Part shown: positions 5,161 through 48,257 of the stretch, piece after piece
How the letters are laid out: each line of letters opens with the position of its first letter
Position numbering within the stretch: the first letter of the stretch is position 1
Virus record (IMG/VR): IMGVR_UViG_3300049460_000128
Coordinates: 186,001-250,000 of that record
Direction: 5' to 3' (one strand)
DNA length: 64,000 nt
Translations under genes and position numbers: made by a program
The notes under the pieces: generated by a model
Told to the model about the DNA's origin: nothing
Seen by the model: only the letters and a program-made list of their open reading frames with translations
Databases searched by the model: none

Positions 5161-5168
5161 TATTTATA
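5161..5168 (-). promoter_or_regulatory. T4-like late promoter TATAAATA
   Basis: Exact T4 late consensus. TAAATA cores also occur in intergenic gaps at 5660, 6183, 26362, 41343, 43577, 46090, 48218, 52375, 54990 and 56300 (minus) and at 37899 and 43594 (plus). Confidence 0.65.
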
Positions 5169-34825: not shown

Positions 34826-37804
34826 TTACCACTTGAACAAATCGTTACTTACATCTTCGTTGGTCAAGGTCAAGTCCCACTTCAAAACACCCAAGAGGTT
34901 GTTCAATTTGAAGTCGATGATTGTCTCTTCCATCGTAGTGTGATCAAACGGCAATTCTTTGAACCACTGCGGCAAGTGCGGCTCGTCAATCGGATAAGCG
35001 ATTGAGGTCATACCCATCGGATTTGGCTTCAGTTTGCAAACAATGATCTTCTGACCATCAGTCAATGACATGGAGAAATTGTCGTTGTGCATCTTACGCA
35101 ATTTCATGTAATTGATCGAGGCCAAAACGTGCCCAGCAATGATGTCTCGCTTCTTCTTTTCATTGGCTTTGTGGCCAGCGTAAATGTCCAGCTTACCAGC
35201 ACTTGCATTATTGACCATGTTCGTTTTCTCAGTCAAGCCATTGCACTTCTTAGGCGAACCTTTTTCCCAACCTGGTTTGTTCCTGAACTCTTTCCTGAAC
35301 ACTTTGATCATGTCAAAGATTTCATCCTGGGACTTACCAGTCAGCGTTGCCATCAGCACGTCTTCCAAGAAGTCTTGCATGTATTGTGGCGTGTCTGAAC
35401 GTTTCAGGTCCAAGCCCATAACTTTCAGCTTACCAGGTTTGCCGTCAATGTCGTAGCGCTCACCCTCTTTGTCGTACATGAGGACCGCGTACTTCTTCTT
35501 CTTGATGAACAAGCCCTTAGAAGCGACGAGTTCGCGACCTGCTGCGATAATTCCACCGCGCTCGATGCCAGTGTTGAAACCCTTGTGCATGAACTCTGGG
35601 AAGCTCTCATTGACTGCATCACCAATGCCATCATACAGTTGAATAATGTTGTCACGAGTGAATTCAAAACTTGCATATTCAGGACGCTTCTGCCATACAG
35701 CTTTCGCACTGAAGTAACTGGAGTCAGTATCCGCGTAGATGATTGCCTCACCCTTGAAGTCATACTCACCTGTGATGATCTCGTTAATCTTCGAGTTCAT
35801 GTGTTTGGCAATCGAACGACCAGTCAACGTTACTGATTGACCAATACGTTTGTCGTAGAACTTCATGCTGGAGTTCAACAACGCACCATACAAACTGTTA
35901 AGCAGAATCTTACGCGCTTGCTGACGTTGATTCCAGAATGTCTTCCAATACTTGGCATCCTTTTCATCATTAGCAGTAATGCGCCCATCTTCGATCACAA
36001 AATTGTGATTGACCATTACCTGAGCTACAACCTTGGCATCTTTCTTGTACAGGGCTTTCGTGAACGCGCCCGAGTCCAAATCATTTGCGGTCAGGGTTGG
36101 CAGCAATCCATTTACTTCAGAGATGAAAGCACTTGGATCAGCATCGAAAGTCTTTGCCAAGTTGGTGCTCTTATCAGTCACATATGCGAAAGTTTTCTCG
36201 CGTGCCTGCATCTCTTTACGCTGACGATACCACGTCGCCAGCAAGCTTGGAATCACGCCAACTTTGTCAGTGCGGAAGATCGTGCCGTTTGCAGTAATGC
36301 ACAGTGGGCGACCTTCGTGGAAGATGAAGTTGTACAGTTCATCAGCCCTAAATACCTTAGTTGTGCCATCTTCAAAGTCAACCGTAATTGCATCCTTGGT
36401 ACGAGCCATAACCTTGTCGTATTCCAGAGTAGAGAATACATTTTCCCACAGTTCAGGCTTTGGTACTTTGTTAGCAATCCGCATTGCGATCATGGCTTCA
36501 GTATCCAGCGGACGAATGTGACCATACAACGTCTCAGGACTCATGTTCAATGCGCGCAGCGTTGATGGGTACAGGGAGTTAATGTCGCAGCAACCAATCT
36601 CATCCTGAATACCAGTCTTCGGCTTGGCCACGTATGCGCCAACGGCCGCATTGCTCAAGTCTTCTTCGTCATCATCGTCCGAATCAAATTCTTCGTCGAA
36701 CTCGTCATCAACTACTTCGGCGGCTTTACGGTCAGGGATGACCATACCCAGGTCATGTGCTTCCAGCATGATCGAGTTTTCGATCAAGGCCACGGAGCCA
36801 TTAGTGGTCTTCAACAGCACGCAGTTGGTGTGCGCAATCTGATTGGCCAGTTCGATGAATTTCTTCTTGGCATCAATCTTAACCATCAGCATAACGTCTT
36901 GACGGTTGTATTCAAGGAAGCGTTCAAAGTCCTTCTTGTACAAGTCGTCTAGCGTACCTTCGTAGACGGTCTTGTTTTCTTTCACCTCAATCTCGCCAAC
37001 GAAGTCAAGACGATATGAGTGCAACTGCTGTGGATTGTGCTTCTGATACAGTTCCAGATAGTCAAGGTGAATACGACCCACTGTATCGTAGGTGATACTT
37101 TTCTTCTTGAACTTGATGTACTCACGACGACGTGGCAATTGATTCCACAAACAGAAGCGACGAGTCTCATCTTTGCTGATCACTCGAGTGATTCGATTCA
37201 CCAAATATGGTACGTCGAAGCCGGTTGAGTTCCAACCAGTAATCACATCTGAGTCTTCAATGATATCCAGGAATGCTTTCAGCATATCACCTTCGTCTTC
37301 GAACAAGAAGCTGTTCTCAAACTTGTCATTGATACGCTGTGCTTCTTCGATCGCCATACCTGGAGGTGGCATGCACAGCGTTACCAATTGATTAGCCCAA
37401 CTCAAGTATACGGAAATTGCGGTCACGTTATTGAACGGGTCTTCGGTTGGTGCGAATCCTCGTTTAGTATCAAACGCGACCTCAATGTCGAAAAATGCGA
37501 TATTGAGTGCTGGTGCTTCAATGTTTCGGTAGTTTTCTTCCAGACTGCGGAAGACAGGATTGACATCGCTTTCAAACAAACGCTTGTTTGCTAGGATGTT
37601 TTTTTCACGGTTAAATGCTTTACCGTTATTGGTACTATACTTGCTGAGGGCATCACCAAAAATACTAACATGGTTGCCTCGTGTATCAGGGTAATACAGT
37701 GTGTAGTTACATGGCAGAGTCTTGTGAACTCGTTCTCCATTTACACGTTCAACGACCAGGATCTGATCTTTCTCCCGGACGTGCATCGCATCAATATAAC
37801 TCAT
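34826..37804 (-). CDS. polB: Family B DNA polymerase with 3'-5' exonuclease
   Basis: ExoI FFDIEV, ExoII GWNSTGFD, ExoIII YNRQD; motif A DINSLYPS, motif B KILLNSLYG, motif C YADTDS, KKKY. Confidence 0.96.
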   Translation of the reverse strand: MSYIDAMHVREKDQILVVERVNGERVHKTLPCNYTLYYPDTRGNHVSIFGDALSKYSTNNGKAFNREKNILANKRLFESDVNPVFRSLEENYRNIEAPALNIAFFDIEVAFDTKRGFAPTEDPFNNVTAISVYLSWANQLVTLCMPPPGMAIEEAQRINDKFENSFLFEDEGDMLKAFLDIIEDSDVITGWNSTGFDVPYLVNRITRVISKDETRRFCLWNQLPRRREYIKFKKKSITYDTVGRIHLDYLELYQKHNPQQLHSYRLDFVGEIEVKENKTVYEGTLDDLYKKDFERFLEYNRQDVMLMVKIDAKKKFIELANQIAHTNCVLLKTTNGSVALIENSIMLEAHDLGMVIPDRKAAEVVDDEFDEEFDSDDDDEEDLSNAAVGAYVAKPKTGIQDEIGCCDINSLYPSTLRALNMSPETLYGHIRPLDTEAMIAMRIANKVPKPELWENVFSTLEYDKVMARTKDAITVDFEDGTTKVFRADELYNFIFHEGRPLCITANGTIFRTDKVGVIPSLLATWYRQRKEMQAREKTFAYVTDKSTNLAKTFDADPSAFISEVNGLLPTLTANDLDSGAFTKALYKKDAKVVAQVMVNHNFVIEDGRITANDEKDAKYWKTFWNQRQQARKILLNSLYGALLNSSMKFYDKRIGQSVTLTGRSIAKHMNSKINEIITGEYDFKGEAIIYADTDSSYFSAKAVWQKRPEYASFEFTRDNIIQLYDGIGDAVNESFPEFMHKGFNTGIERGGIIAAGRELVASKGLFIKKKKYAVLMYDKEGERYDIDGKPGKLKVMGLDLKRSDTPQYMQDFLEDVLMATLTGKSQDEIFDMIKVFRKEFRNKPGWEKGSPKKCNGLTEKTNMVNNASAGKLDIYAGHKANEKKKRDIIAGHVLASINYMKLRKMHNDNFSMSLTDGQKIIVCKLKPNPMGMTSIAYPIDEPHLPQWFKELPFDHTTMEETIIDFKLNNLLGVLKWDLTLTNEDVSNDLFKW

Positions 37805-37811
37805 TTTAATT

Positions 37812-37846
37812 CCTCATATCCCATTTTTGGCTGGGTGACCCTATTG
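37812..37846 (-). repeat. 35-bp direct repeat, copy 1 (functional polymerase leader)
   Basis: cctcatatcccatttttggctgggtgaccctattg; 33/35 identical to 38585-38619. Confidence 0.9.
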
Positions 37847-37967
37847 AATTATCACATTTCAGTGATACTTGAGTTTAACAAAGCCATCTAAAAACTCATA
37901 AATAGAAAATGCCAGTCGCGATGTCCCCACATCCACTGGCTCTAACTACTTTCAAGGAGTAATCAGC

Positions 37968-38555
37968 GTGGCTATTTATAGCATCTACACCTTTACCAAT
38001 ATGACTAATCAAAAAGTGTATGTTGGTATATCAAACAACCCAGAACGACGTATGAAGACTCATATTTCTATGTCAAACAACAGTTCAAACTATCTGTTAC
38101 ATAAGGCAATCCGTAAATATGGCGTCGACAAATTTACGTTCAATGTAATAGCTCAAACGTGGACGAAAGAACTGGCATTTTCATTAGAGCAATATTTCAT
38201 TGATGATTTGGCATCGTATTTTCATGACTCTAGATTTGGTGGATACAACATGACCAAAGGTGGCGATGGTGTTGATTCCGAAACTGCTCGTAAAAATATT
38301 CAAAAACGAAATAAGTCGGCGGTTGCCGCTGGCACCCATAATTTTCAAGGCGATACTGGCTCGCAAATGCAAAAGGATAGATTTGCTGCCGGTACACATA
38401 ACTGGTCTGGTGATAATGGCAAGCTACTATCCAAGCAACGGTTTGATGATGGCACACATAATCAATTACTAGTTCATGTATGTCCACATTGCCAAAAACG
38501 AGGAAAAGGGGCAGTGATGTTTAGACATCACTTTGAACGGTGCAAACATCGTTAA
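37968..38555 (+). mobile_element. Free-standing GIY-YIG homing endonuclease (Seg-like)
   Basis: IYTFTN...VYVGISNNPERR, conserved E and N (GGYNMTKGGDG), C-terminal CPHC; GTG start with AAGGAG; own TAAATA promoter; flanked by the duplicated leader. Confidence 0.88.
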
Positions 38556-38584
38556 TTGCATCAACGTATGACATTACTTACTTA

Positions 38585-38619
38585 CCTCATATCCCATTTC
38601 TGGCTGGGTGACCTTATTG
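38585..38619 (-). repeat. 35-bp direct repeat, copy 2 (orphaned original polymerase leader)
   Basis: cctcatatcccatttctggctgggtgaccttattg, followed on the minus strand by ATG TCA TAC GTT GAT GCA (MSYVDA). Confidence 0.9.
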
Positions 38620-38661
38620 TGGTTTGGCAGTCAGTATATGGCTTCTATACTGACTTGCCTA

Positions 38662-38967
38662 TTAACCGTGCCAGGTATTCCACAGTCCCACAATATCAAT
38701 ACACCAGAAGAACAGATTCAAGAACACCCAGAACCCATTCGACCGCATGTAACTTGATACCATGAGCAAACTGCTACCACACAGGTAGAAGAAATACACT
38801 TCAAGCAAATTTGGATTCGGCGCGGTTATTGCCAATGACCCACTTGCTATCATACATGACAGCGTGCCAGCCATTTCAATCCAAAAGACCAGGGGATTTT
38901 CACGCAAGTCCTTGCGCCAATTCTCGATGATCCCGTCGAAGAACTGCTTATTGAAAATATTACGCAT
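38662..38967 (-). CDS. Small multi-pass membrane protein
   Basis: Three hydrophobic segments. Confidence 0.7.
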   Translation of the reverse strand: MRNIFNKQFFDGIIENWRKDLRENPLVFWIEMAGTLSCMIASGSLAITAPNPNLLEVYFFYLCGSSLLMVSSYMRSNGFWVFLNLFFWCIDIVGLWNTWHG

Positions 38968-39427
38968 TGCTATCCTTATCAGTCGGAGCCAATGCCATTA
39001 GCCATTCCGTGAATGTTTCGTTATGAAGAGCATCAGCTCCTCGTTCAGCACGAATGTGCTCTATGGCGTCACCAGGCGTCATACCGCGCTTGATCAACGC
39101 AAGAGCTATAACCAGTGCTGAACGGTTCAAACCCGCGCTACAGTGAACGAGGGTTGGTCCCATACTTGTGAATCTGTTAACAGTTTCAGCAAGCTCATGA
39201 AGCTTTGTCAAATCAGGCATCCAGGCAGCATCGTCGAATGGATAAACAATCGCCATTGTGCCATTAGGAATGTGATAAGTTGGAGCCTTATTTACCGCAA
39301 TGATGTACTGATATCGCATCGCATCAACGGGATTGCCACCAATCCAAAGATTGTCAGCAATCTTGTCTTCGTTGTTGACCAGAACAATTCCGCCAAAGCT
39401 TGACTTCAGTTTGTCACTTATCTTCAT
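38960..39427 (-). CDS. Dual-specificity protein phosphatase
   Basis: CX5R loop HCSAGLNRS; upstream PFDD acid loop. Confidence 0.9.
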   Translation of the reverse strand: MKISDKLKSSFGGIVLVNNEDKIADNLWIGGNPVDAMRYQYIIAVNKAPTYHIPNGTMAIVYPFDDAAWMPDLTKLHELAETVNRFTSMGPTLVHCSAGLNRSALVIALALIKRGMTPGDAIEHIRAERGADALHNETFTEWLMALAPTDKDSNA

Positions 39428-40208: not shown

Positions 40209-41225
40209 TCAAGTTTTACTGCGTTGTTCGTTGAGTTGATCACTAGCCAGGTTCTTCATCTTTGCTTCAACCTCAATATCCATCCAAGACAAGTGACTCA
40301 ATGCCCAGTCATTGGTGGCTTGATTCCAGCAGTAGTCGGAGTGAGCACGCAAATCACGCAAACTCTTACCAGCCGCCCGTTGTTCATGGAAGTCGGGAAG
40401 TACCAAGGGATCAGCATTAACCAATGCTTCAGGCCTACTGATACTGTAGTGACCTAATGGGCGAACACCACGCCAACTTGCTTTCACATAGTCGATACGA
40501 TGATCGTCAGGTTGAATGAAGTGACCTTCACTCTTAATCCACTCGTGGTGAATGTCCAAGACAATGGCGGCGTGATCGGCCAAGTATTCCAGTTCAGTCA
40601 ATCCGAAAGAGTACTCATCATTCTCAATAGTGATGAGATTTCGCCCATCTTCGCTCAAGCCTTCAAGACCACGAATCAAGCCCGCTACACCACCGGCGCG
40701 ACTGCCTGTATGGATATTGATAGCTGCGCCATTGGGGTGCCAGCCAGTAGCAAAGCCCATCATACGCATCATCTCGACGTGGTATTCGAACTCGGCGATC
40801 GCGCGATAGTATGTTGATTCATTGACTGAATTCAGAACACAGTATTGGCCAGGATGGAATGAAACTCTAACGTCGTATTGGCGTGCGATAGCGCCAATCT
40901 TTTCAAAGCCTGTTTCCATTACTTCGCGCATGGCAGGTTCGCCATATACCCAATTACCAACGTCATGCGTGTAGGCGGGCAGTAGATCAGAACCGAAACG
41001 AATCATTCGTTGTTCTTCTGGAAGCAAGCTGATATGCGTGATCAGACGTTCCGTTGTATCCATGTTGTGGGTCACAAGACCCAACAGCTTGGTGATGAGT
41101 TGATTGTCTGTCAGCTTGCCCAATGACGTGATTGTTGTTGTTTTGGGATTCATTAATCCCTCGGCTGCTTCGTCGCGTGTTGGACTGAGCCAATTACAAC
41201 AAAAACCTAATCTTCCTTGTGTCAT
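40209..41225 (-). CDS. uvsE: UV damage endonuclease (UVDE)
   Basis: RLGFCC, MIRFGSDLLP, SFHPGQY, NIHTG, TIENDE, VLDIHH, EAKMKNLA. Confidence 0.92.
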   Translation of the reverse strand: MTQGRLGFCCNWLSPTRDEAAEGLMNPKTTTITSLGKLTDNQLITKLLGLVTHNMDTTERLITHISLLPEEQRMIRFGSDLLPAYTHDVGNWVYGEPAMREVMETGFEKIGAIARQYDVRVSFHPGQYCVLNSVNESTYYRAIAEFEYHVEMMRMMGFATGWHPNGAAINIHTGSRAGGVAGLIRGLEGLSEDGRNLITIENDEYSFGLTELEYLADHAAIVLDIHHEWIKSEGHFIQPDDHRIDYVKASWRGVRPLGHYSISRPEALVNADPLVLPDFHEQRAAGKSLRDLRAHSDYCWNQATNDWALSHLSWMDIEVEAKMKNLASDQLNEQRSKT

Positions 41226-42906: not shown

Positions 42907-43545
42907 TTAATTGATATCGCGGAGGATTTTGAGGAGTGATCCCAGCTCAGATTGCTTCACGACTGCAAAGCCCTGGCTGTTGAGGAACGTCAGAAAGTTT
43001 TCTGGATTGTTCGTGTTGATATCACGATATTGTTCGGGCAAATCGTCCCATGCTCTCATGAGAGGATGGGTTTTGTTCTTGAGACTCAGAACTGCACCAA
43101 AACTCCATCCTTCATTTGCTTTCTCACGCATCCAGGACGCATGTTGAACTTTTGCCAATTGAGCACACAGAGCCTGATATTCGTCTTGTGGTAAGGTTAA
43201 ATCGGCTACTGCTTGATTGAGCTTTTGATCTTGGGTAGGATTGATGGCAATCTGGAAGTTGCCAGGAGGACTTACACGCTTCCATGCGTCAGCGACTTTT
43301 GCAAGTTCGCTTGGCAACAAGTCGCGCATAAGAGGAATAATGAATTCAGTTTTGTCATTGTATGAACGTCGAACCATGCGCGTAGTTACGGGCTGGCCAT
43401 TCAGATCCAAAGTTTCAACACCAGTCATGATGCCCTGCGGCGCATTGCTCATAACGGTTTTAAACCAAAGACGTCCATCCGTAACAGTGATGTGGTCATC
43501 ACTGACTAATTTGATATATCGTGGAATATTGGCTTGTTTGAGCAT
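42907..43545 (-). CDS. RyR-domain protein
   Basis: LAKVQHASWMREKANEGWSFG...KTHPLMRAWDDLP. Confidence 0.85.
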   Translation of the reverse strand: MLKQANIPRYIKLVSDDHITVTDGRLWFKTVMSNAPQGIMTGVETLDLNGQPVTTRMVRRSYNDKTEFIIPLMRDLLPSELAKVADAWKRVSPPGNFQIAINPTQDQKLNQAVADLTLPQDEYQALCAQLAKVQHASWMREKANEGWSFGAVLSLKNKTHPLMRAWDDLPEQYRDINTNNPENFLTFLNSQGFAVVKQSELGSLLKILRDIN

Positions 43546-43629
43546 TGAAAATCATCCGAATTATTGGTTCATTAGGTATTTATAAAACCCTACTAAATAG
43601 TCTACAACGCCAATCTGGAAGGATCAATT

Positions 43630-46184: not shown

Positions 46185-48170
46185 TTACAGGTATTCAACA
46201 ACCACAGTACCTGCAACCGTACCAGCCGCAACGAAAATCTTCAGCGCGGTGTCAGTTGCGTAGATCTGGTTAACTTCAACCACGTACACGCCAGTGCCAG
46301 TCGAATCGACATCAGCGGTAGAAGCGAGTTGATTGTTAACAGTCAGAGTACCAACTTGTACGTCAGCATCGGTAGCGCCAGCAGCAGTGATGTACACTTT
46401 CACGCGGTGAACCATACCCTTCACGGTGCCCAGATCGACAACAGTTGCCGAACCAGTTGCAGTGAATGTGGCGTAAACGGCACGGCCAGCATTAGCAACA
46501 CCAGCAGAAATCTTGCTGTCGGTGTAAGCCTTGGAATCAACCAGAGCTTGGTCAGCCTTAGCAGTTGCATCTGCGGCAGCAGCATCGATTGCATCAGAGA
46601 TCTCGCCTTCCAGCAGAGTTACTTTGCCATCAACATACGCCAGCAGCGACGAATTCAGTGCAGTGTCAGCAGCCTTGTAAGCTGTGTCCATTGCCTTGAG
46701 AGCAACGTCAAGAGCGGTCAGGGAGCTAACAACCGAAGTAGCCGAATTCAGGTAGTTGGTACCTGTGAATGTGGCAAACGTACCGTCAGTGTTCAGACCA
46801 ACAGCGCCTTCAATTGCATCAACTTCATCTTGCAGGGCCGTGATCGAACCCGAACCCAGAGCAGCCAGTGCATCCGATACCGATTTGATCTGTGCATCCA
46901 ACAGGAAGTCCGCACCTTTCAGTGTGGTAGCGCTGTTGATGTAGTTCGAAGTGGTTTCAGCTACATAAGCACCAGCAGCCGACAGACCAGCACCTGCTTG
47001 CGTAGCATCCAGTTCACCCTGAACAGCAGTGATTGCAGCGCCACGAGCAGTAACTTCAGCCGACAGGTCAGTACGCAGAGCGGTGATTTCGGTAGTCAGA
47101 GCATCCGAAACCTTAACACCAGTTGCACTCATCGACAACGACGAACCATCCAGTTTCAGAGTCAGAGTCGAATCAGCACCAACTTCATCTGGTGTGAAGT
47201 GCAGACCACCAGTGCTCGATACTTGTACATCCAGACGGTTACCGTTTTTCAACAGACCCAGACCAGCAACGATCTGACCGGTACCAGTGAACTGGACCCA
47301 TGCAGTACCGTTGAATACCCAACCTTGTTGGTCAGCATCGTCAAACAGTGCCCAGCTTGTGCTTGGAGTTTGACCACCGTCAAAATCAGCACCGTCGAAG
47401 GTGTAGATCTTGTTGTCAGCGTCAACCAGAACGCGATCGCCAGCAACCGAAGTCAGGGCATCACGTGCAGCAATGTCAGCAACCTTAGCGGTTACTGGAG
47501 CTTGCCAGGTCAGACCACCAGCAACGGAGTCAACGTAGTTCTTGGTAGCAGCGCCGAGTGGCAGTGTAGGGTCAGCATTCAGAATCAATGCGCCAGTCAG
47601 TGTGCCACCAGTCAGGTTCAGTTTCAGTGCTTCAGCGGCAGTTGCACGAGCAACTTCAGCAGCCAGTGCATCGGATACGCCAGTTACAGCAGTTGCGCGG
47701 TCAGCGATTTCGCCGGTCAGAGCAGCACCGACAGCTTCCAGAGCTTCTTTGAACGAGGTCTTACCGAATGCAGCAGAACCAGCAGCGAACGCAACCAGAG
47801 TACCATCAGTACCCAGACCAACAGCGGTCTCGATAGCATTTACTTCAGTTTGCAGAGCAGTCGTGTTAGCGGCAGCTTGAGCAACAGCATCAGCAACAGC
47901 AGCGGTCAGCTGGCTGAAGTTGATTGCGTCACCATTTGCAGTACCATTTGCCACGTTAGTGACTTTGTTGGCACCCATGTCGATCGTTGCAGTAGCACCA
48001 ACGGTCAGACCTGCAATCGTTGCGTTACCCGCATTGATTGGAGCAGCGGCTGAGCCAGCTGCATTTTTGAAAGTGAAAACATTTGTGTCGTTGATCAGAC
48101 GTGGACCAGCTTTACCAAACTGAACGTCTGTTGCTACACCAACGAGACCAAAATTCTTAATATTAGCCAT
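46185..48170 (-). CDS. Virion fibre protein with Ala-rich coiled coils
   Basis: N- and C-termini paralogous to 44045..46063; repeated LDxALK-type heptads. Confidence 0.8.
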   Translation of the reverse strand: MANIKNFGLVGVATDVQFGKAGPRLINDTNVFTFKNAAGSAAAPINAGNATIAGLTVGATATIDMGANKVTNVANGTANGDAINFSQLTAAVADAVAQAAANTTALQTEVNAIETAVGLGTDGTLVAFAAGSAAFGKTSFKEALEAVGAALTGEIADRATAVTGVSDALAAEVARATAAEALKLNLTGGTLTGALILNADPTLPLGAATKNYVDSVAGGLTWQAPVTAKVADIAARDALTSVAGDRVLVDADNKIYTFDGADFDGGQTPSTSWALFDDADQQGWVFNGTAWVQFTGTGQIVAGLGLLKNGNRLDVQVSSTGGLHFTPDEVGADSTLTLKLDGSSLSMSATGVKVSDALTTEITALRTDLSAEVTARGAAITAVQGELDATQAGAGLSAAGAYVAETTSNYINSATTLKGADFLLDAQIKSVSDALAALGSGSITALQDEVDAIEGAVGLNTDGTFATFTGTNYLNSATSVVSSLTALDVALKAMDTAYKAADTALNSSLLAYVDGKVTLLEGEISDAIDAAAADATAKADQALVDSKAYTDSKISAGVANAGRAVYATFTATGSATVVDLGTVKGMVHRVKVYITAAGATDADVQVGTLTVNNQLASTADVDSTGTGVYVVEVNQIYATDTALKIFVAAGTVAGTVVVEYL

Positions 48171-48257
48171 CTTTAACTCCTTGTTATGATTTAAATCCCC
48201 GAGTGGGTTTTCGTGGATATTTATATGAACCTAGGCGCCAATTTAACTCTGTGTTAA

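What the first reader, a model, noticed from the sequence alone, without database searches (positions are those of the whole stretch)
37787..38619. Homing endonuclease inserted into the first codons of the polymerase gene and rebuilt the gene start with a recoded copy
Seen: a 35-bp leader is duplicated on both sides of the GIY-YIG gene (37812-37846 and 38585-38619; 2 mismatches). The distal copy is followed by ATG TCA TAC GTT GAT GCA (MSYVDA, 38574-38557), which stops one base from the endonuclease stop codon and runs out as a 17-aa mini-ORF. The functional gene starts ATG AGT TAT ATT GAT GCG (MSYIDA). The element therefore split the pol 5' end and supplies a replacement RBS plus N-terminal codons with mostly synonymous changes. 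Inference: an intron-less homing strategy in which the recoded start is immune to the nuclease, whose target would be the uninterrupted pol 5' region.
Basis: partly seen in the sequence, partly recalled or inferred. Interest (0 to 1): 0.78.

Follow-up and report, generated by a model that had tools for sequence, protein, structure and literature searches.

The report
Homing endonuclease cassette rebuilds polymerase start
A selfish nuclease gene sits inside the seventh codon of a giant phage's DNA polymerase gene and carries its own promoter-like region, regulatory hairpin and first codons so the gene still works, leaving the old start as a stub; near-identical genomes with and without the insert show it has moved recently.

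Summary
A 35-nt leader occurs twice (37812-37846 and 38585-38619, 33/35 identical, unique in the window). It flanks an intact antisense GIY-YIG gene (37968-38555). The distal copy is followed by the first 20 nt of polB and then runs out as a 17-codon mini-ORF.

Related phage contigs settle the reading. Fourteen endonuclease-free loci (thirteen different contigs) carry one leader each. Two pairs of near-isogenic genomes (L014/L103, L013/L104) differ by a single 767-nt insertion placed after polB nt 20. That insertion holds the endonuclease gene, a promoter-like region, the hairpin leader and a new polB start.

The same block is 807/808 identical in two backgrounds that are only about 87% identical, so it moved recently.

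Next to the insertion, polB nt 21-28 is a polymorphism hot spot. It holds the only non-synonymous differences in 995 codons. This marks the probable cleavage and immunity site.

Immunity does not come from recoded codons 2-6, which are identical to the relic in L013. The candidate changes are in codons 7-10.

The leader is a covarying hairpin with an 8-nt loop, laid out like the T4 gp43 translational operator. It is widespread upstream of phage polB genes and absent from Rfam.

This is a new variant of end-replacing homing elements.

The parts
34826..37804 (-). Family B DNA polymerase gene (992 aa), intact. Its first 20 nt (37785-37804) belong to the imported cassette.
   Evidence: Pfam DNA_pol_B and DNA_pol_B_exo1. 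It is 52% identical to Sinorhizobium phage Phosso polB and 91% to the endonuclease-free relative L016.
37785..38554 (.). The inserted cassette as a whole (770 nt). In pol orientation it holds the antisense endonuclease gene, its 5' region, a promoter-like region, hairpin 2, leader A and polB nt 1-20.
   Evidence: Alignment with L016 shows one insertion of about 775 nt. The homologous 767-nt insertion is delimited exactly in the isogenic pairs L014/L103 and L013/L104.
37812..37846 (-). Leader A of the working polB. Hairpin stem 37832-37835 / 37820-37823, 8-nt loop GCCAAAAA at 37824-37831, Shine-Dalgarno GAGG at 37812-37815.
   Evidence: In 10 sequences 100% of cells pair and 3 of 4 pairs show compensatory changes.
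37850..37867 (-). Second small hairpin (6-bp stem) between the promoter-like region and leader A. Also present in L013 and L099.
37872..37903 (-). Promoter-like element for polB. Invariant ATTTATGA (37896-37903), exactly 18 nt, then TGn + TAAACT (37872-37880).
   Evidence: The same element with the same 18-nt spacing lies upstream of polB in endonuclease-free L011, L017, L098 and L099 and in endonuclease-carrying L013 and L015. It is unique in the window. Promoter function is inferred.
37904..37967 (+). 5' region specific to the endonuclease, with RBS AAGGAG (37954-37959). A CATAAATA box (37897-37904) straddles the junction with the promoter-like region.
   Evidence: Conserved in L013 and L015 but absent from endonuclease-free L011 and L017.
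37968..38555 (+). GIY-YIG homing endonuclease gene (195 aa), antisense to polB.
   Evidence: Pfam GIY-YIG 1.5e-11. It aligns to the I-TevI catalytic domain 1MK0 with the Tyr, Tyr-x-Gly, Arg, His, Glu and Asn columns conserved. Homologues are 66-74% identical, all 195 aa, with pS 0.75-0.93 against pN 0.16-0.23.
38521..38574 (-). Relic of the resident polB start. Nt 1-20 (38555-38574) are followed by out-of-register sequence, giving a 17-codon mini-ORF.
   Evidence: The relics in L013 and L014 end at the same nt 20 and stop after 7 codons.
38585..38619 (-). Leader B, the resident (now relic) leader. Hairpin stem 38605-38608 / 38593-38596, loop GCCAGAAA at 38597-38604, GAGG at 38585-38588.
   Evidence: Its upstream context matches endonuclease-free L016 and L003.
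38626..38659 (-). Strong hairpin between the upstream gene and leader B. It is native and also present in L016.
   Evidence: Fold -28.4 kcal/mol, z = -4.3; alignment A3.
38662..38967 (-). Upstream 101-aa gene of unknown function, probably a membrane protein judging from its hydrophobic stretches. It is the left flank of the site in all relatives.

Best explanation
The region is a free-standing GIY-YIG homing endonuclease cassette that occupies polB after nt 20 (codon 7) and replaces the gene's start.

The cassette (window 37785-38554) carries, in pol orientation:
- the endonuclease gene in antisense;
- a promoter-like region;
- a hairpin leader with Shine-Dalgarno sequence;
- polB nt 1-20.

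Proposed homing cycle, in a mixed infection:
1. The enzyme cuts endonuclease-free polB alleles close to nt 20-28 (inferred).
2. The break is repaired from the donor. The recipient's own leader plus nt 1-20 pairs with the donor's relic, and polB from nt 21 onward pairs with the donor's polB.
3. The recipient's old start stays behind as a non-functional stub. Polymerase is then expressed from the imported promoter, leader and start.
4. A few donor substitutions at nt 21-28 come along and probably protect the new allele from re-cutting (inferred).

The duplicated 35-nt leader is most likely the polymerase's translational operator, a hairpin next to the RBS as in T4 gp43 (inferred from structure, covariation and position).

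Shown here: the anatomy, the empty and filled alleles, the recent horizontal spread, and the hot spot. Inferred: cleavage position, immunity, promoter and operator function.
For: (1) Same gene at the same place. Endonuclease homologues of 70% and 66% identity lie antisense just upstream of polB in three other phage contigs.

(2) Near-isogenic pairs. L014 and L103 show 54 mismatches over about 6.8 kb plus one 767-nt insertion. L013 and L104 show 9 mismatches over about 6.4 kb outside one divergent patch, plus the same 767-nt insertion.

(3) Direction of the insertion. The empty alleles have the relic-type leader and codons up to nt 20. The functional start of the filled alleles has a different leader and codons, so the new start came with the insert.

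(4) Recent spread. L013 and L014 are about 87% identical in polB. From relic nt 10 to polB nt 50 they show 1 mismatch in 808 nt.

(5) Linked changes. Mismatches between filled and empty alleles cluster at polB nt 21, 25, 27 and 28. In L013/L104 these are 4 of the 5 polB mismatches, and no case this tight arose in 200,000 permutations.

(6) Hot spot. Among five near-isogenic polB genes, 5 of 49 segregating sites fall in nt 21-28 (permutation P about 5e-5). The only non-synonymous sites in 995 codons are codons 7 and 9, with three different endonuclease-free variants.

(7) Not revertants. The empty alleles carry ATG CAT GTT, ATC CAC GTT or ATC CAT ATA, not the cassette's ATC CAT ATC. They are therefore not simple deletion products.

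(8) A third lineage agrees. L015 (endonuclease present) against its closest endonuclease-free relative found here, L011, matches at only 19 of the first 30 nt of polB. The mean over the gene is 26.6, and 2 of 80 windows are as low.

(9) The enzyme looks functional. Catalytic residues are intact and the gene is under strong purifying selection.

(10) Origin of the imported region. The region between the endonuclease and leader A is homologous to the native polB upstream region of endonuclease-free L011, L017, L098 and L099.

(11) The hairpin is real. Covariation is complete, with 3 of 4 pairs compensatory.
Against: No cleavage data exist, so the cut site and immunity are inferred only from polymorphism and conversion tracts.

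The window itself has no near-isogenic empty partner. Its closest one, L016, is 91% identical in protein, and the window's first 30 nt are not unusually diverged from it (24/30 against a mean of 25.6).

No single nucleotide separates all endonuclease-carrying alleles from all endonuclease-free ones across the three enzyme lineages.

L015 keeps the endonuclease without a relic, so the order of events is open: an intergenic insertion first, or the relic form first.

The N-terminal ten codons of polB are variable in general. Part of the hot spot could reflect weak constraint.

The promoter call rests on conservation only. The consensus scan did not flag it.
Confidence: 0.8

Rival explanations
1. 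Ancient scar with vertical inheritance. One old illegitimate event created the duplication. The endonuclease is inherited vertically, and the patchy distribution comes from repeated loss by recombination between the two repeats.
For: The relic ends at the same nt 20 in endonuclease lineages that are only 70% identical, which fits a single founding junction. Direct repeats of about 60 nt would allow precise loss.
Against: The cassette shows 1 mismatch in 808 nt between backgrounds that are about 87% identical. The empty alleles do not carry the cassette's nt 21-28, as deletion products would. Endonuclease-carrying genomes are interleaved with closer endonuclease-free relatives in three polB lineages.
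Confidence: 0.05
2. Homing is real, but the target lies elsewhere. The enzyme cuts at a distance (in the leader, the upstream gene or deeper in polB), as some Seg enzymes do. The nt 21-28 cluster would then be only a short conversion tract or a weakly constrained stretch, not the recognition site.
For: Free-standing T4 endonucleases can cut far from their insertion site (SegG, cited in PMC10448857). In the MobA element, polymorphisms around the nick site alone did not block nicking (bioRxiv 10.1101/2022.08.31.505936). In L015 the gene lies about 200 nt from codon 7.
Against: Conversion tracts are very short on both sides of nt 20: under 11 nt to the left and 8 to about 100 nt to the right. This places the break close to the junction. 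Three different variants arose at the same codons in endonuclease-free genomes.
Confidence: 0.12
3. Domesticated arrangement. The nuclease and the second leader now serve the phage. The relic hairpin could act as a decoy operator or antisense control of polymerase synthesis, or the nuclease could exclude co-infecting relatives, rather than acting as a purely selfish element.
For: Leader B keeps a perfect hairpin, Shine-Dalgarno sequence and ATG in the window, L013 and L014. The endonuclease is under long-term purifying selection. A TATAAATA box on the pol-sense strand is conserved inside endonuclease codons 2-5.
Against: In the isogenic pairs the relic is simply the recipient's own recent start, so an intact relic needs no function. 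L015 does without it. The mini-ORF tails are not conserved, 17 codons against 7. Most relatives lack the whole cassette.
Confidence: 0.08
4. Assembly artefact. The duplication, or the empty alleles, arise from mis-assembly of metagenomic reads across repeats.
For: All sequences are metagenomic contigs, and only contig-level data could be laid on the window.
Against: The same architecture was assembled independently from five samples. The window's region was also recovered as a single 0-mismatch contig in the public run's own Logan assembly, though that run may be the window's source sample. The repeats differ from each other. The empty alleles have their own distinct nt 21-28 variants that no collapse of the filled allele could produce.
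Confidence: 0.01

Closest known systems
Free-standing GIY-YIG homing endonucleases of T4-type phages (Seg family; 'intronless homing' by SegF, SegG) and the I-TevI catalytic domain
   Same: An I-TevI-like GIY-YIG catalytic domain with a separate C-terminal module. The gene is a stand-alone ORF next to an essential replication gene. Distribution among close relatives is patchy, with short co-conversion of flanking markers (review PMC2988022).
   Different: Seg genes sit between genes, and no duplication of the target gene's start is mentioned in the T4 mobile-element review searched here. Here the insert lies inside the coding sequence and brings a replacement promoter-like region, leader and start. 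The C-terminal module (three GTHNF-type repeats plus a CxxC...H...C motif) has no Pfam match.
MobA / gene 60 cassette of T4-like phages (endonuclease plus HomR replacement segment plus 50-nt bypass)
   Same: A phage endonuclease cassette inserted in an essential replication gene. It carries its own diverged copy of the target region and a new translation start for the downstream part (bioRxiv 10.1101/2022.08.31.505936).
   Different: MobA deletes 55-75 nt of the parental region and splits the protein into two chains, with a translational bypass providing immunity. Here nothing is deleted and the polymerase stays one chain. The parental start survives as a relic, and a promoter-like region and operator-like hairpin are imported as well.
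End-replacing homing elements of eukaryotes: WHO elements at yeast FBA1, and fungal mitochondrial atp6/cox2/rps3 cases with an endonuclease ORF plus a duplicated gene end
   Same: The element integrates within a gene, replaces that end of the gene with its own copy and leaves the old end as a relic beside it (PMC7282813; Paquin et al. 1994 and others as described in PMC4019555).
   Different: Those elements replace 3' ends and use other nuclease families or other hosts. Here it is the 5' end, so transcription and translation signals must travel with the element. The host is a bacteriophage, and only one relic is present rather than an array.
T4/RB69 gp43 translational operator
   Same: A hairpin with an 8-nt loop immediately 5' of the Shine-Dalgarno sequence of a family B polymerase gene. 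RB69 has 16 nt, T4 has 18 nt, and here it is 16 nt. The loop here ends in (A/G/U)AAA, while RB49's loop contains UAAA (PMC3014915; T4 sequence).
   Different: The loop sequence GCCANAAA differs from T4's AAUAACUC. Binding by the polymerase is untested. Distant relatives carry two such hairpins in tandem.

Membership tests
GIY-YIG homing endonuclease (I-TevI / Seg type) | GIY-YIG catalytic domain with conserved Tyr, Tyr-x-Gly, Arg, His, Glu and Asn | tested here: met
   Pfam PF01541 at 1.5e-11. Alignment to I-TevI 1MK0/1LN0. Y7, Y18, G20, R28, E74 and N94 are invariant and H32 nearly invariant in 10 homologues.
GIY-YIG homing endonuclease (I-TevI / Seg type) | Presence/absence polymorphism at one site among close relatives (filled and empty alleles) | tested here: met
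   Pairs L014/L103 and L013/L104 differ by one 767-nt insertion. Fourteen endonuclease-free loci (13 contigs) against four endonuclease-carrying contigs.
GIY-YIG homing endonuclease (I-TevI / Seg type) | Horizontal spread with co-conversion of flanking markers | tested here: met
   An 808-nt block with 1 mismatch in backgrounds about 87% identical. Donor substitutions at polB nt 21-28.
GIY-YIG homing endonuclease (I-TevI / Seg type) | Site-specific cleavage of the empty allele and resistance of the occupied allele | not testable with these tools
   Only indirect evidence: the polymorphism hot spot at nt 21-28.
GIY-YIG homing endonuclease (I-TevI / Seg type) | Recognisable DNA-binding module (NUMOD, zinc finger or helix-turn-helix as in I-TevI) | tested here: inconclusive
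   No Pfam hit for residues 95-195. The alignment shows a variable number of GTHxF repeats and a conserved CxxC...H...C motif.
Intron- or intein-borne endonuclease | Endonuclease ORF embedded in a self-splicing intron or in-frame intein | tested here: not met
   The gene is on the opposite strand to polB. There is no Rfam intron match at E <= 1. PolB is rebuilt by a duplicated start, not by splicing.
End-replacing homing elements (WHO-like, mitochondrial atp6 type) | The element carries its own copy of the target gene's end and leaves the resident end as a relic | tested here: met
   The imported leader and nt 1-20 differ from the resident ones, and the resident copy is retained as a relic.
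End-replacing homing elements (WHO-like, mitochondrial atp6 type) | Homologous nuclease family and replacement of the 3' end | tested here: not met
   The nuclease here is GIY-YIG, whereas WHO proteins resemble inteins and HO (abstract of PMC7282813). The 5' end is replaced. This is an analogy of mechanism, not membership.
gp43-type translational operator | Hairpin with an 8-nt loop adjoining the RBS of the polymerase gene, supported by covariation | tested here: met
   (100% paired, 3 of 4 pairs compensatory).
gp43-type translational operator | Specific binding and autogenous repression by the polymerase | not testable with these tools
The loop sequence differs from T4 and RB69.

The most novel reading that the evidence does not exclude
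This may be a previously undescribed kind of phage homing element, a 'gene-start replacement' cassette. It invades the first codons of an essential gene on the antisense strand and stays harmless by importing a complete expression module: promoter, autoregulatory operator hairpin, RBS and first codons. Each invasion turns the victim's own start into the homology arm and relic. Endonuclease-free phages respond with an arms race confined to two polymerase codons. Alongside it, the GCCAUAAA-loop hairpin would be a widespread, uncatalogued polB operator RNA family.
Probability: 0.5. Interest if true: 0.72.

Novelty: new variant of a known kind. Interest (0 to 1): 0.62.

Why it matters
It shows how a homing endonuclease can colonise the very start of an essential gene without an intron, an intein or a split protein. 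It carries the gene's expression signals with it. This is the 5' mirror image of the yeast WHO and mitochondrial atp6 elements.

The matched empty and filled genomes give a ready-made, testable target site (polB nt about 10-30) and candidate immunity substitutions for a new GIY-YIG specificity.

The case also shows natural promoter and operator swapping at a polymerase gene driven by a selfish element. It exposes a two-codon arms race visible in metagenomes.

Finally, it points to a conserved leader hairpin that may extend gp43-type autoregulation far beyond T4 and RB69.

Tried and rejected
- **Cultured phages.** Megablast of the region against 50,697 phage records gave no match. The closest annotated polymerases are only 42-52% identical, so cultured phages gave no empty site.
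- **Metagenome scan with polB.** It gave only two loci. The useful relatives came from exact-protein look-ups instead.
- **Reads.** The one public run holding the window showed only the source contig, with no variant joints and no RNA. Transcript starts therefore could not be mapped.
- **Consensus promoter and terminator scan.** It found nothing meaningful at the polB or endonuclease 5' regions.
- **Rfam.** No family matched the leader or any intron.
- **Pfam on the endonuclease C-terminal half.** Only noise.
- **Leader as a general repeated regulatory motif of the phage.** Rejected, because it is unique to these two sites.
- **A universal discriminating base** between endonuclease-carrying and endonuclease-free alleles across all three enzyme lineages. 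None found.
- **Phosso and Atu_ph07.** They lack the hairpin. The antisense ORF upstream of Atu_ph07 polB has no Pfam domain.
- **Literature.** Searches found no phage case of a duplicated gene start beside an endonuclease. That is absence within the searched library only.


Full report
**What is in the window**

On the - strand, a 992-aa family B DNA polymerase gene runs 37804 to 34826 (Pfam DNA_pol_B and exonuclease domain). The best annotated relatives are jumbo phages: Sinorhizobium phage Phosso at 52%, Atu_ph07 at 49% and RaK2-like phages at 42%. The window is part of a 296.6-kb IMG/VR contig from a rhizosphere sample.

Immediately upstream, on the + strand, lies a 195-aa ORF (37968-38555, GTG start). 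It hits Pfam GIY-YIG at 1.5e-11 and PHROG homing-endonuclease families.

A 35-nt segment occurs on both sides of that ORF (37812-37846 and 38585-38619). The copies are 33/35 identical, and the segment occurs nowhere else in 64 kb, against zero expected.

The distal copy is followed by ATG TCA TAC GTT GAT GCA AT (38574-38555). It then runs out of register into a 17-codon ORF. The only refinement is that polB homology reaches nt 20 and overlaps the endonuclease stop codon by one base.

**Relatives without the endonuclease**

IMG/VR, JGI, ENA and Logan contigs gave 14 related endonuclease-free loci from 13 different contigs. L012 is the same contig as L003. The loci are L003/L012, L004, L011, L016, L017, L098, L099, L103-L107, L109 and L110.

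A covariance model of the leader finds exactly one copy in each of them. It finds two copies only in the window, L013 and L014.

The endonuclease-free genomes come in two layouts:
- **Type I** (L016, L003, L103-L107, L109, L110): upstream 101-aa gene, a strong hairpin, the leader, then polB.
- **Type II** (L011, L017, L098, L099): a terminator, then a conserved element ATTTATGA-N18-TAnAnT preceded by TGn, then the leader and polB.

**Relatives with the endonuclease**

Homologues of 70% (L013, L014) and 66% (L015) identity sit at the same place, antisense and upstream of polB.

L013 and L014 have the same build as the window: Type I left flank, relic leader, polB nt 1-20, antisense endonuclease, a 62-nt endonuclease-specific 5' region, the Type II element, a second leader, then polB.

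L015 has the endonuclease directly abutting the upstream gene, followed by the Type II element, with no relic.

All four endonuclease genes are 195 codons long without indels. Synonymous sites are saturated (pS 0.75-0.93) while pN is 0.16-0.23. The N-terminal half aligns to the I-TevI catalytic domain with the catalytic residues conserved. The C-terminal half holds GTHNF-type repeats in variable number and a CxxC...H...C motif. The enzyme is therefore probably active.

**Decisive comparison**

- L103 is near-isogenic with L014: 54 mismatches in about 6.8 kb.
- L104 is near-isogenic with L013: 9 mismatches in about 6.4 kb outside one divergent patch.
- Each pair differs by a single 767-nt insertion.

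The empty alleles have the relic-type leader and relic-type codons up to nt 20, and then continue ATG CAT GTT. In the filled alleles that resident start is cut off after nt 20 and is followed by the antisense endonuclease stop. The working gene has a different leader and start, followed by ATC CAT ATC CGA.

So the endonuclease arrived together with the promoter-like region, leader, RBS and first codons. The old start is the recipient's own.

**Evidence for recent movement**

L013 and L014 differ at 377 of 2,988 polB positions and are about 85% identical across the locus. From relic nt 10 to polB nt 50 they show one mismatch in 808 nt, with mismatches every 8-10 nt on both sides of that block.

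The block equals the cassette plus fewer than 11 nt on the left and 30 nt on the right. The same cassette thus entered two diverged backgrounds recently, with very short conversion tracts. That places the initiating break near the junction (inference).

The empty alleles cannot be deletion revertants. Recombination between the repeats would leave the cassette's nt 21-28, which none of them has.

**Probable target and immunity**

Filled and empty partners differ at polB nt 21, 25 and 27, and also at nt 28 in L013/L104. In L013/L104 these are 4 of the 5 polB mismatches, and none of 200,000 permutations was as clustered.

Among five near-isogenic polB genes (L103, L107, L109, L110, L014) there are 49 segregating sites. 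Five of them lie within nt 21-28 (permutation P about 5e-5). The only non-synonymous sites in the whole gene are codons 7 and 9.

The endonuclease-free genomes carry three different versions of these codons: ATG CAT GTT, ATC CAC GTT and ATC CAT ATA AGA. The last encodes the same Ile7 and Ile9 as the cassette but with different codons.

In the third lineage, L015 and L011 match at only 19 of the first 30 polB nt, against a mean of 26.6 per 30 nt across the gene.

I read this as a target-site arms race at codons 7-10. This is inference, since no cleavage was tested.

In L013 the relic and the new start are identical over nt 1-20. The codon 2-6 differences in the window therefore reflect two natural alleles, not a designed recoding. 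Both codon versions exist in endonuclease-free relatives L002, L006 and L017.

For the window itself no isogenic empty partner was found. Its first 30 nt are not unusually diverged from L016.

**The leader**

The duplicated 35 nt contain a 4-bp stem and an 8-nt loop GCCANAAA, followed by the Shine-Dalgarno sequence. Across ten sequences all cells pair and three of the four pairs change by compensatory double substitutions: CCCA/UGGG, CCUG/CAGG, CCCG/CGGG and GCCG/CGGC.

The layout matches the T4/RB69 gp43 translational operator. That operator is a hairpin of 18 or 16 nt with an 8-nt loop next to the RBS, and RB49's loop contains UAAA (PMC3014915; T4 sequence). I therefore propose that the leader is the polymerase's autoregulatory operator. 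That is a claim about how it works. Membership is untested.

In the isogenic pairs the relic hairpin is simply the recipient's recent functional leader. Its intactness therefore needs no function of its own.

**How pol is expressed after invasion**

The cassette's ATTTATGA-N18-TGnTAnAnT element has invariant spacing in seven loci and is native to Type II phages. It is unique in the window.

It is a plausible extended -10 promoter. It would free polB from read-through across the antisense endonuclease gene. This is inferred, and the consensus scan did not call it.

**Origin**

L015 shows the endonuclease in a plain intergenic position of a Type II genome. One route to the relic form is one-sided, illegitimate repair of a break at codon 7 in a Type I genome. 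Such repair is known for T4 intron homing (Parker et al. 1999, as reviewed in PMC2988022). After that event the relic itself serves as the left homology arm.

The reverse order cannot be excluded. The relic ends at nt 20 in endonuclease lineages that are only 70% identical, which argues for one founding junction.

**Comparison with known systems**

- The enzyme belongs with free-standing GIY-YIG homing endonucleases of T4-type phages.
- The T4 MobA/gene 60 cassette also carries a diverged replacement (HomR) of its target region, but it deletes the parental piece and splits the protein.
- Yeast WHO elements and fungal mitochondrial atp6/cox2 cases replace a gene's 3' end and leave relics.
- I found no description of a 5'-end version carrying promoter and operator in phages. 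That is absence in the searched library only.

Verdict: a real, well-supported feature and a new variant of a known kind.

Noticed in passing
L018-L097 (IMG/VR polB relatives, about 45-55% identity), within 130 nt upstream of each polB start: Hairpins with an 8-nt loop GCCNNAAN (consensus GCCAUAAA) and freely covarying stems occur upstream of polB in 44 of 77 distant relatives. They usually come as two in tandem, ending about 40 nt and about 10-15 nt before the start codon. The background elsewhere in these loci is 0.018 per kb. No Rfam family matches. This may be a widespread polB operator RNA.
   Followed up: partly
window 37973-37980 (- strand); also 43577-43584, 48218-48225, 5161-5168: All four exact TATAAATA boxes (the T4 late-promoter consensus) in the window are on the gene-sense - strand. 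Three lie 32-58 nt upstream of gene starts. The fourth lies inside endonuclease codons 2-5, pointing toward polB, and is conserved in the L013 and L015 endonuclease genes despite saturated synonymous sites. It may be a late promoter that also makes antisense RNA to the endonuclease 5' UTR.
   Followed up: partly
window 37897-37904 (+ strand): A CATAAATA box, one mismatch from TATAAATA, is formed at the junction of the endonuclease-specific 5' region and the invariant ATTTATGA. It lies 63 nt before the endonuclease start and is present in the window, L013 and L015. It may be a late promoter for the endonuclease.
   Followed up: no
L104 205-556 against L013 (uvdE gene): In an otherwise near-identical pair, a stretch of about 350 nt inside the UV-endonuclease gene carries 71 mismatches. 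This is a second, unrelated recombination patch.
   Followed up: no
window 37905-37916 and 38171-38182: A perfect 12-nt inverted repeat (GAAAATGCCAGT / ACTGGCATTTTC) links the endonuclease 5' region and the endonuclease coding sequence. The ACTGGCATTT motif also recurs next to ATTTATGA in L011, L013 and L015. Its meaning is unknown.
   Followed up: no
Phage records OP617745.1 / LC768491.1 (Klebsiella phages KP13-7, phiKp_21) and MF403008.1 (Atu_ph07): In KP13-7 and phiKp_21 the polB match is split into two pieces spread over about 4.7 kb. In Atu_ph07 polB is annotated as two CDS, and an unannotated 165-aa antisense ORF abuts its start. These may be other insertions in or beside polB in related jumbo phages.
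   Followed up: no
window 38960-39427, 40209-41225, 42907-43545, 46185-48170: Neighbouring genes: a dual-specificity phosphatase (DSPc), a UvdE UV-damage endonuclease, a RyR-domain protein, and a 661-aa protein with a weak, below-cutoff YadA-stalk match. The gene order is conserved in all relatives.
   Followed up: partly
L015 7818-8369 (+ strand): A 183-aa ORF on the opposite strand beside uvdE in L015, with a 156-aa antisense ORF at the matching place in L098. Neither has a Pfam match, and no such ORF is called in L013 or L014. It may be another mobile insert.
   Followed up: no
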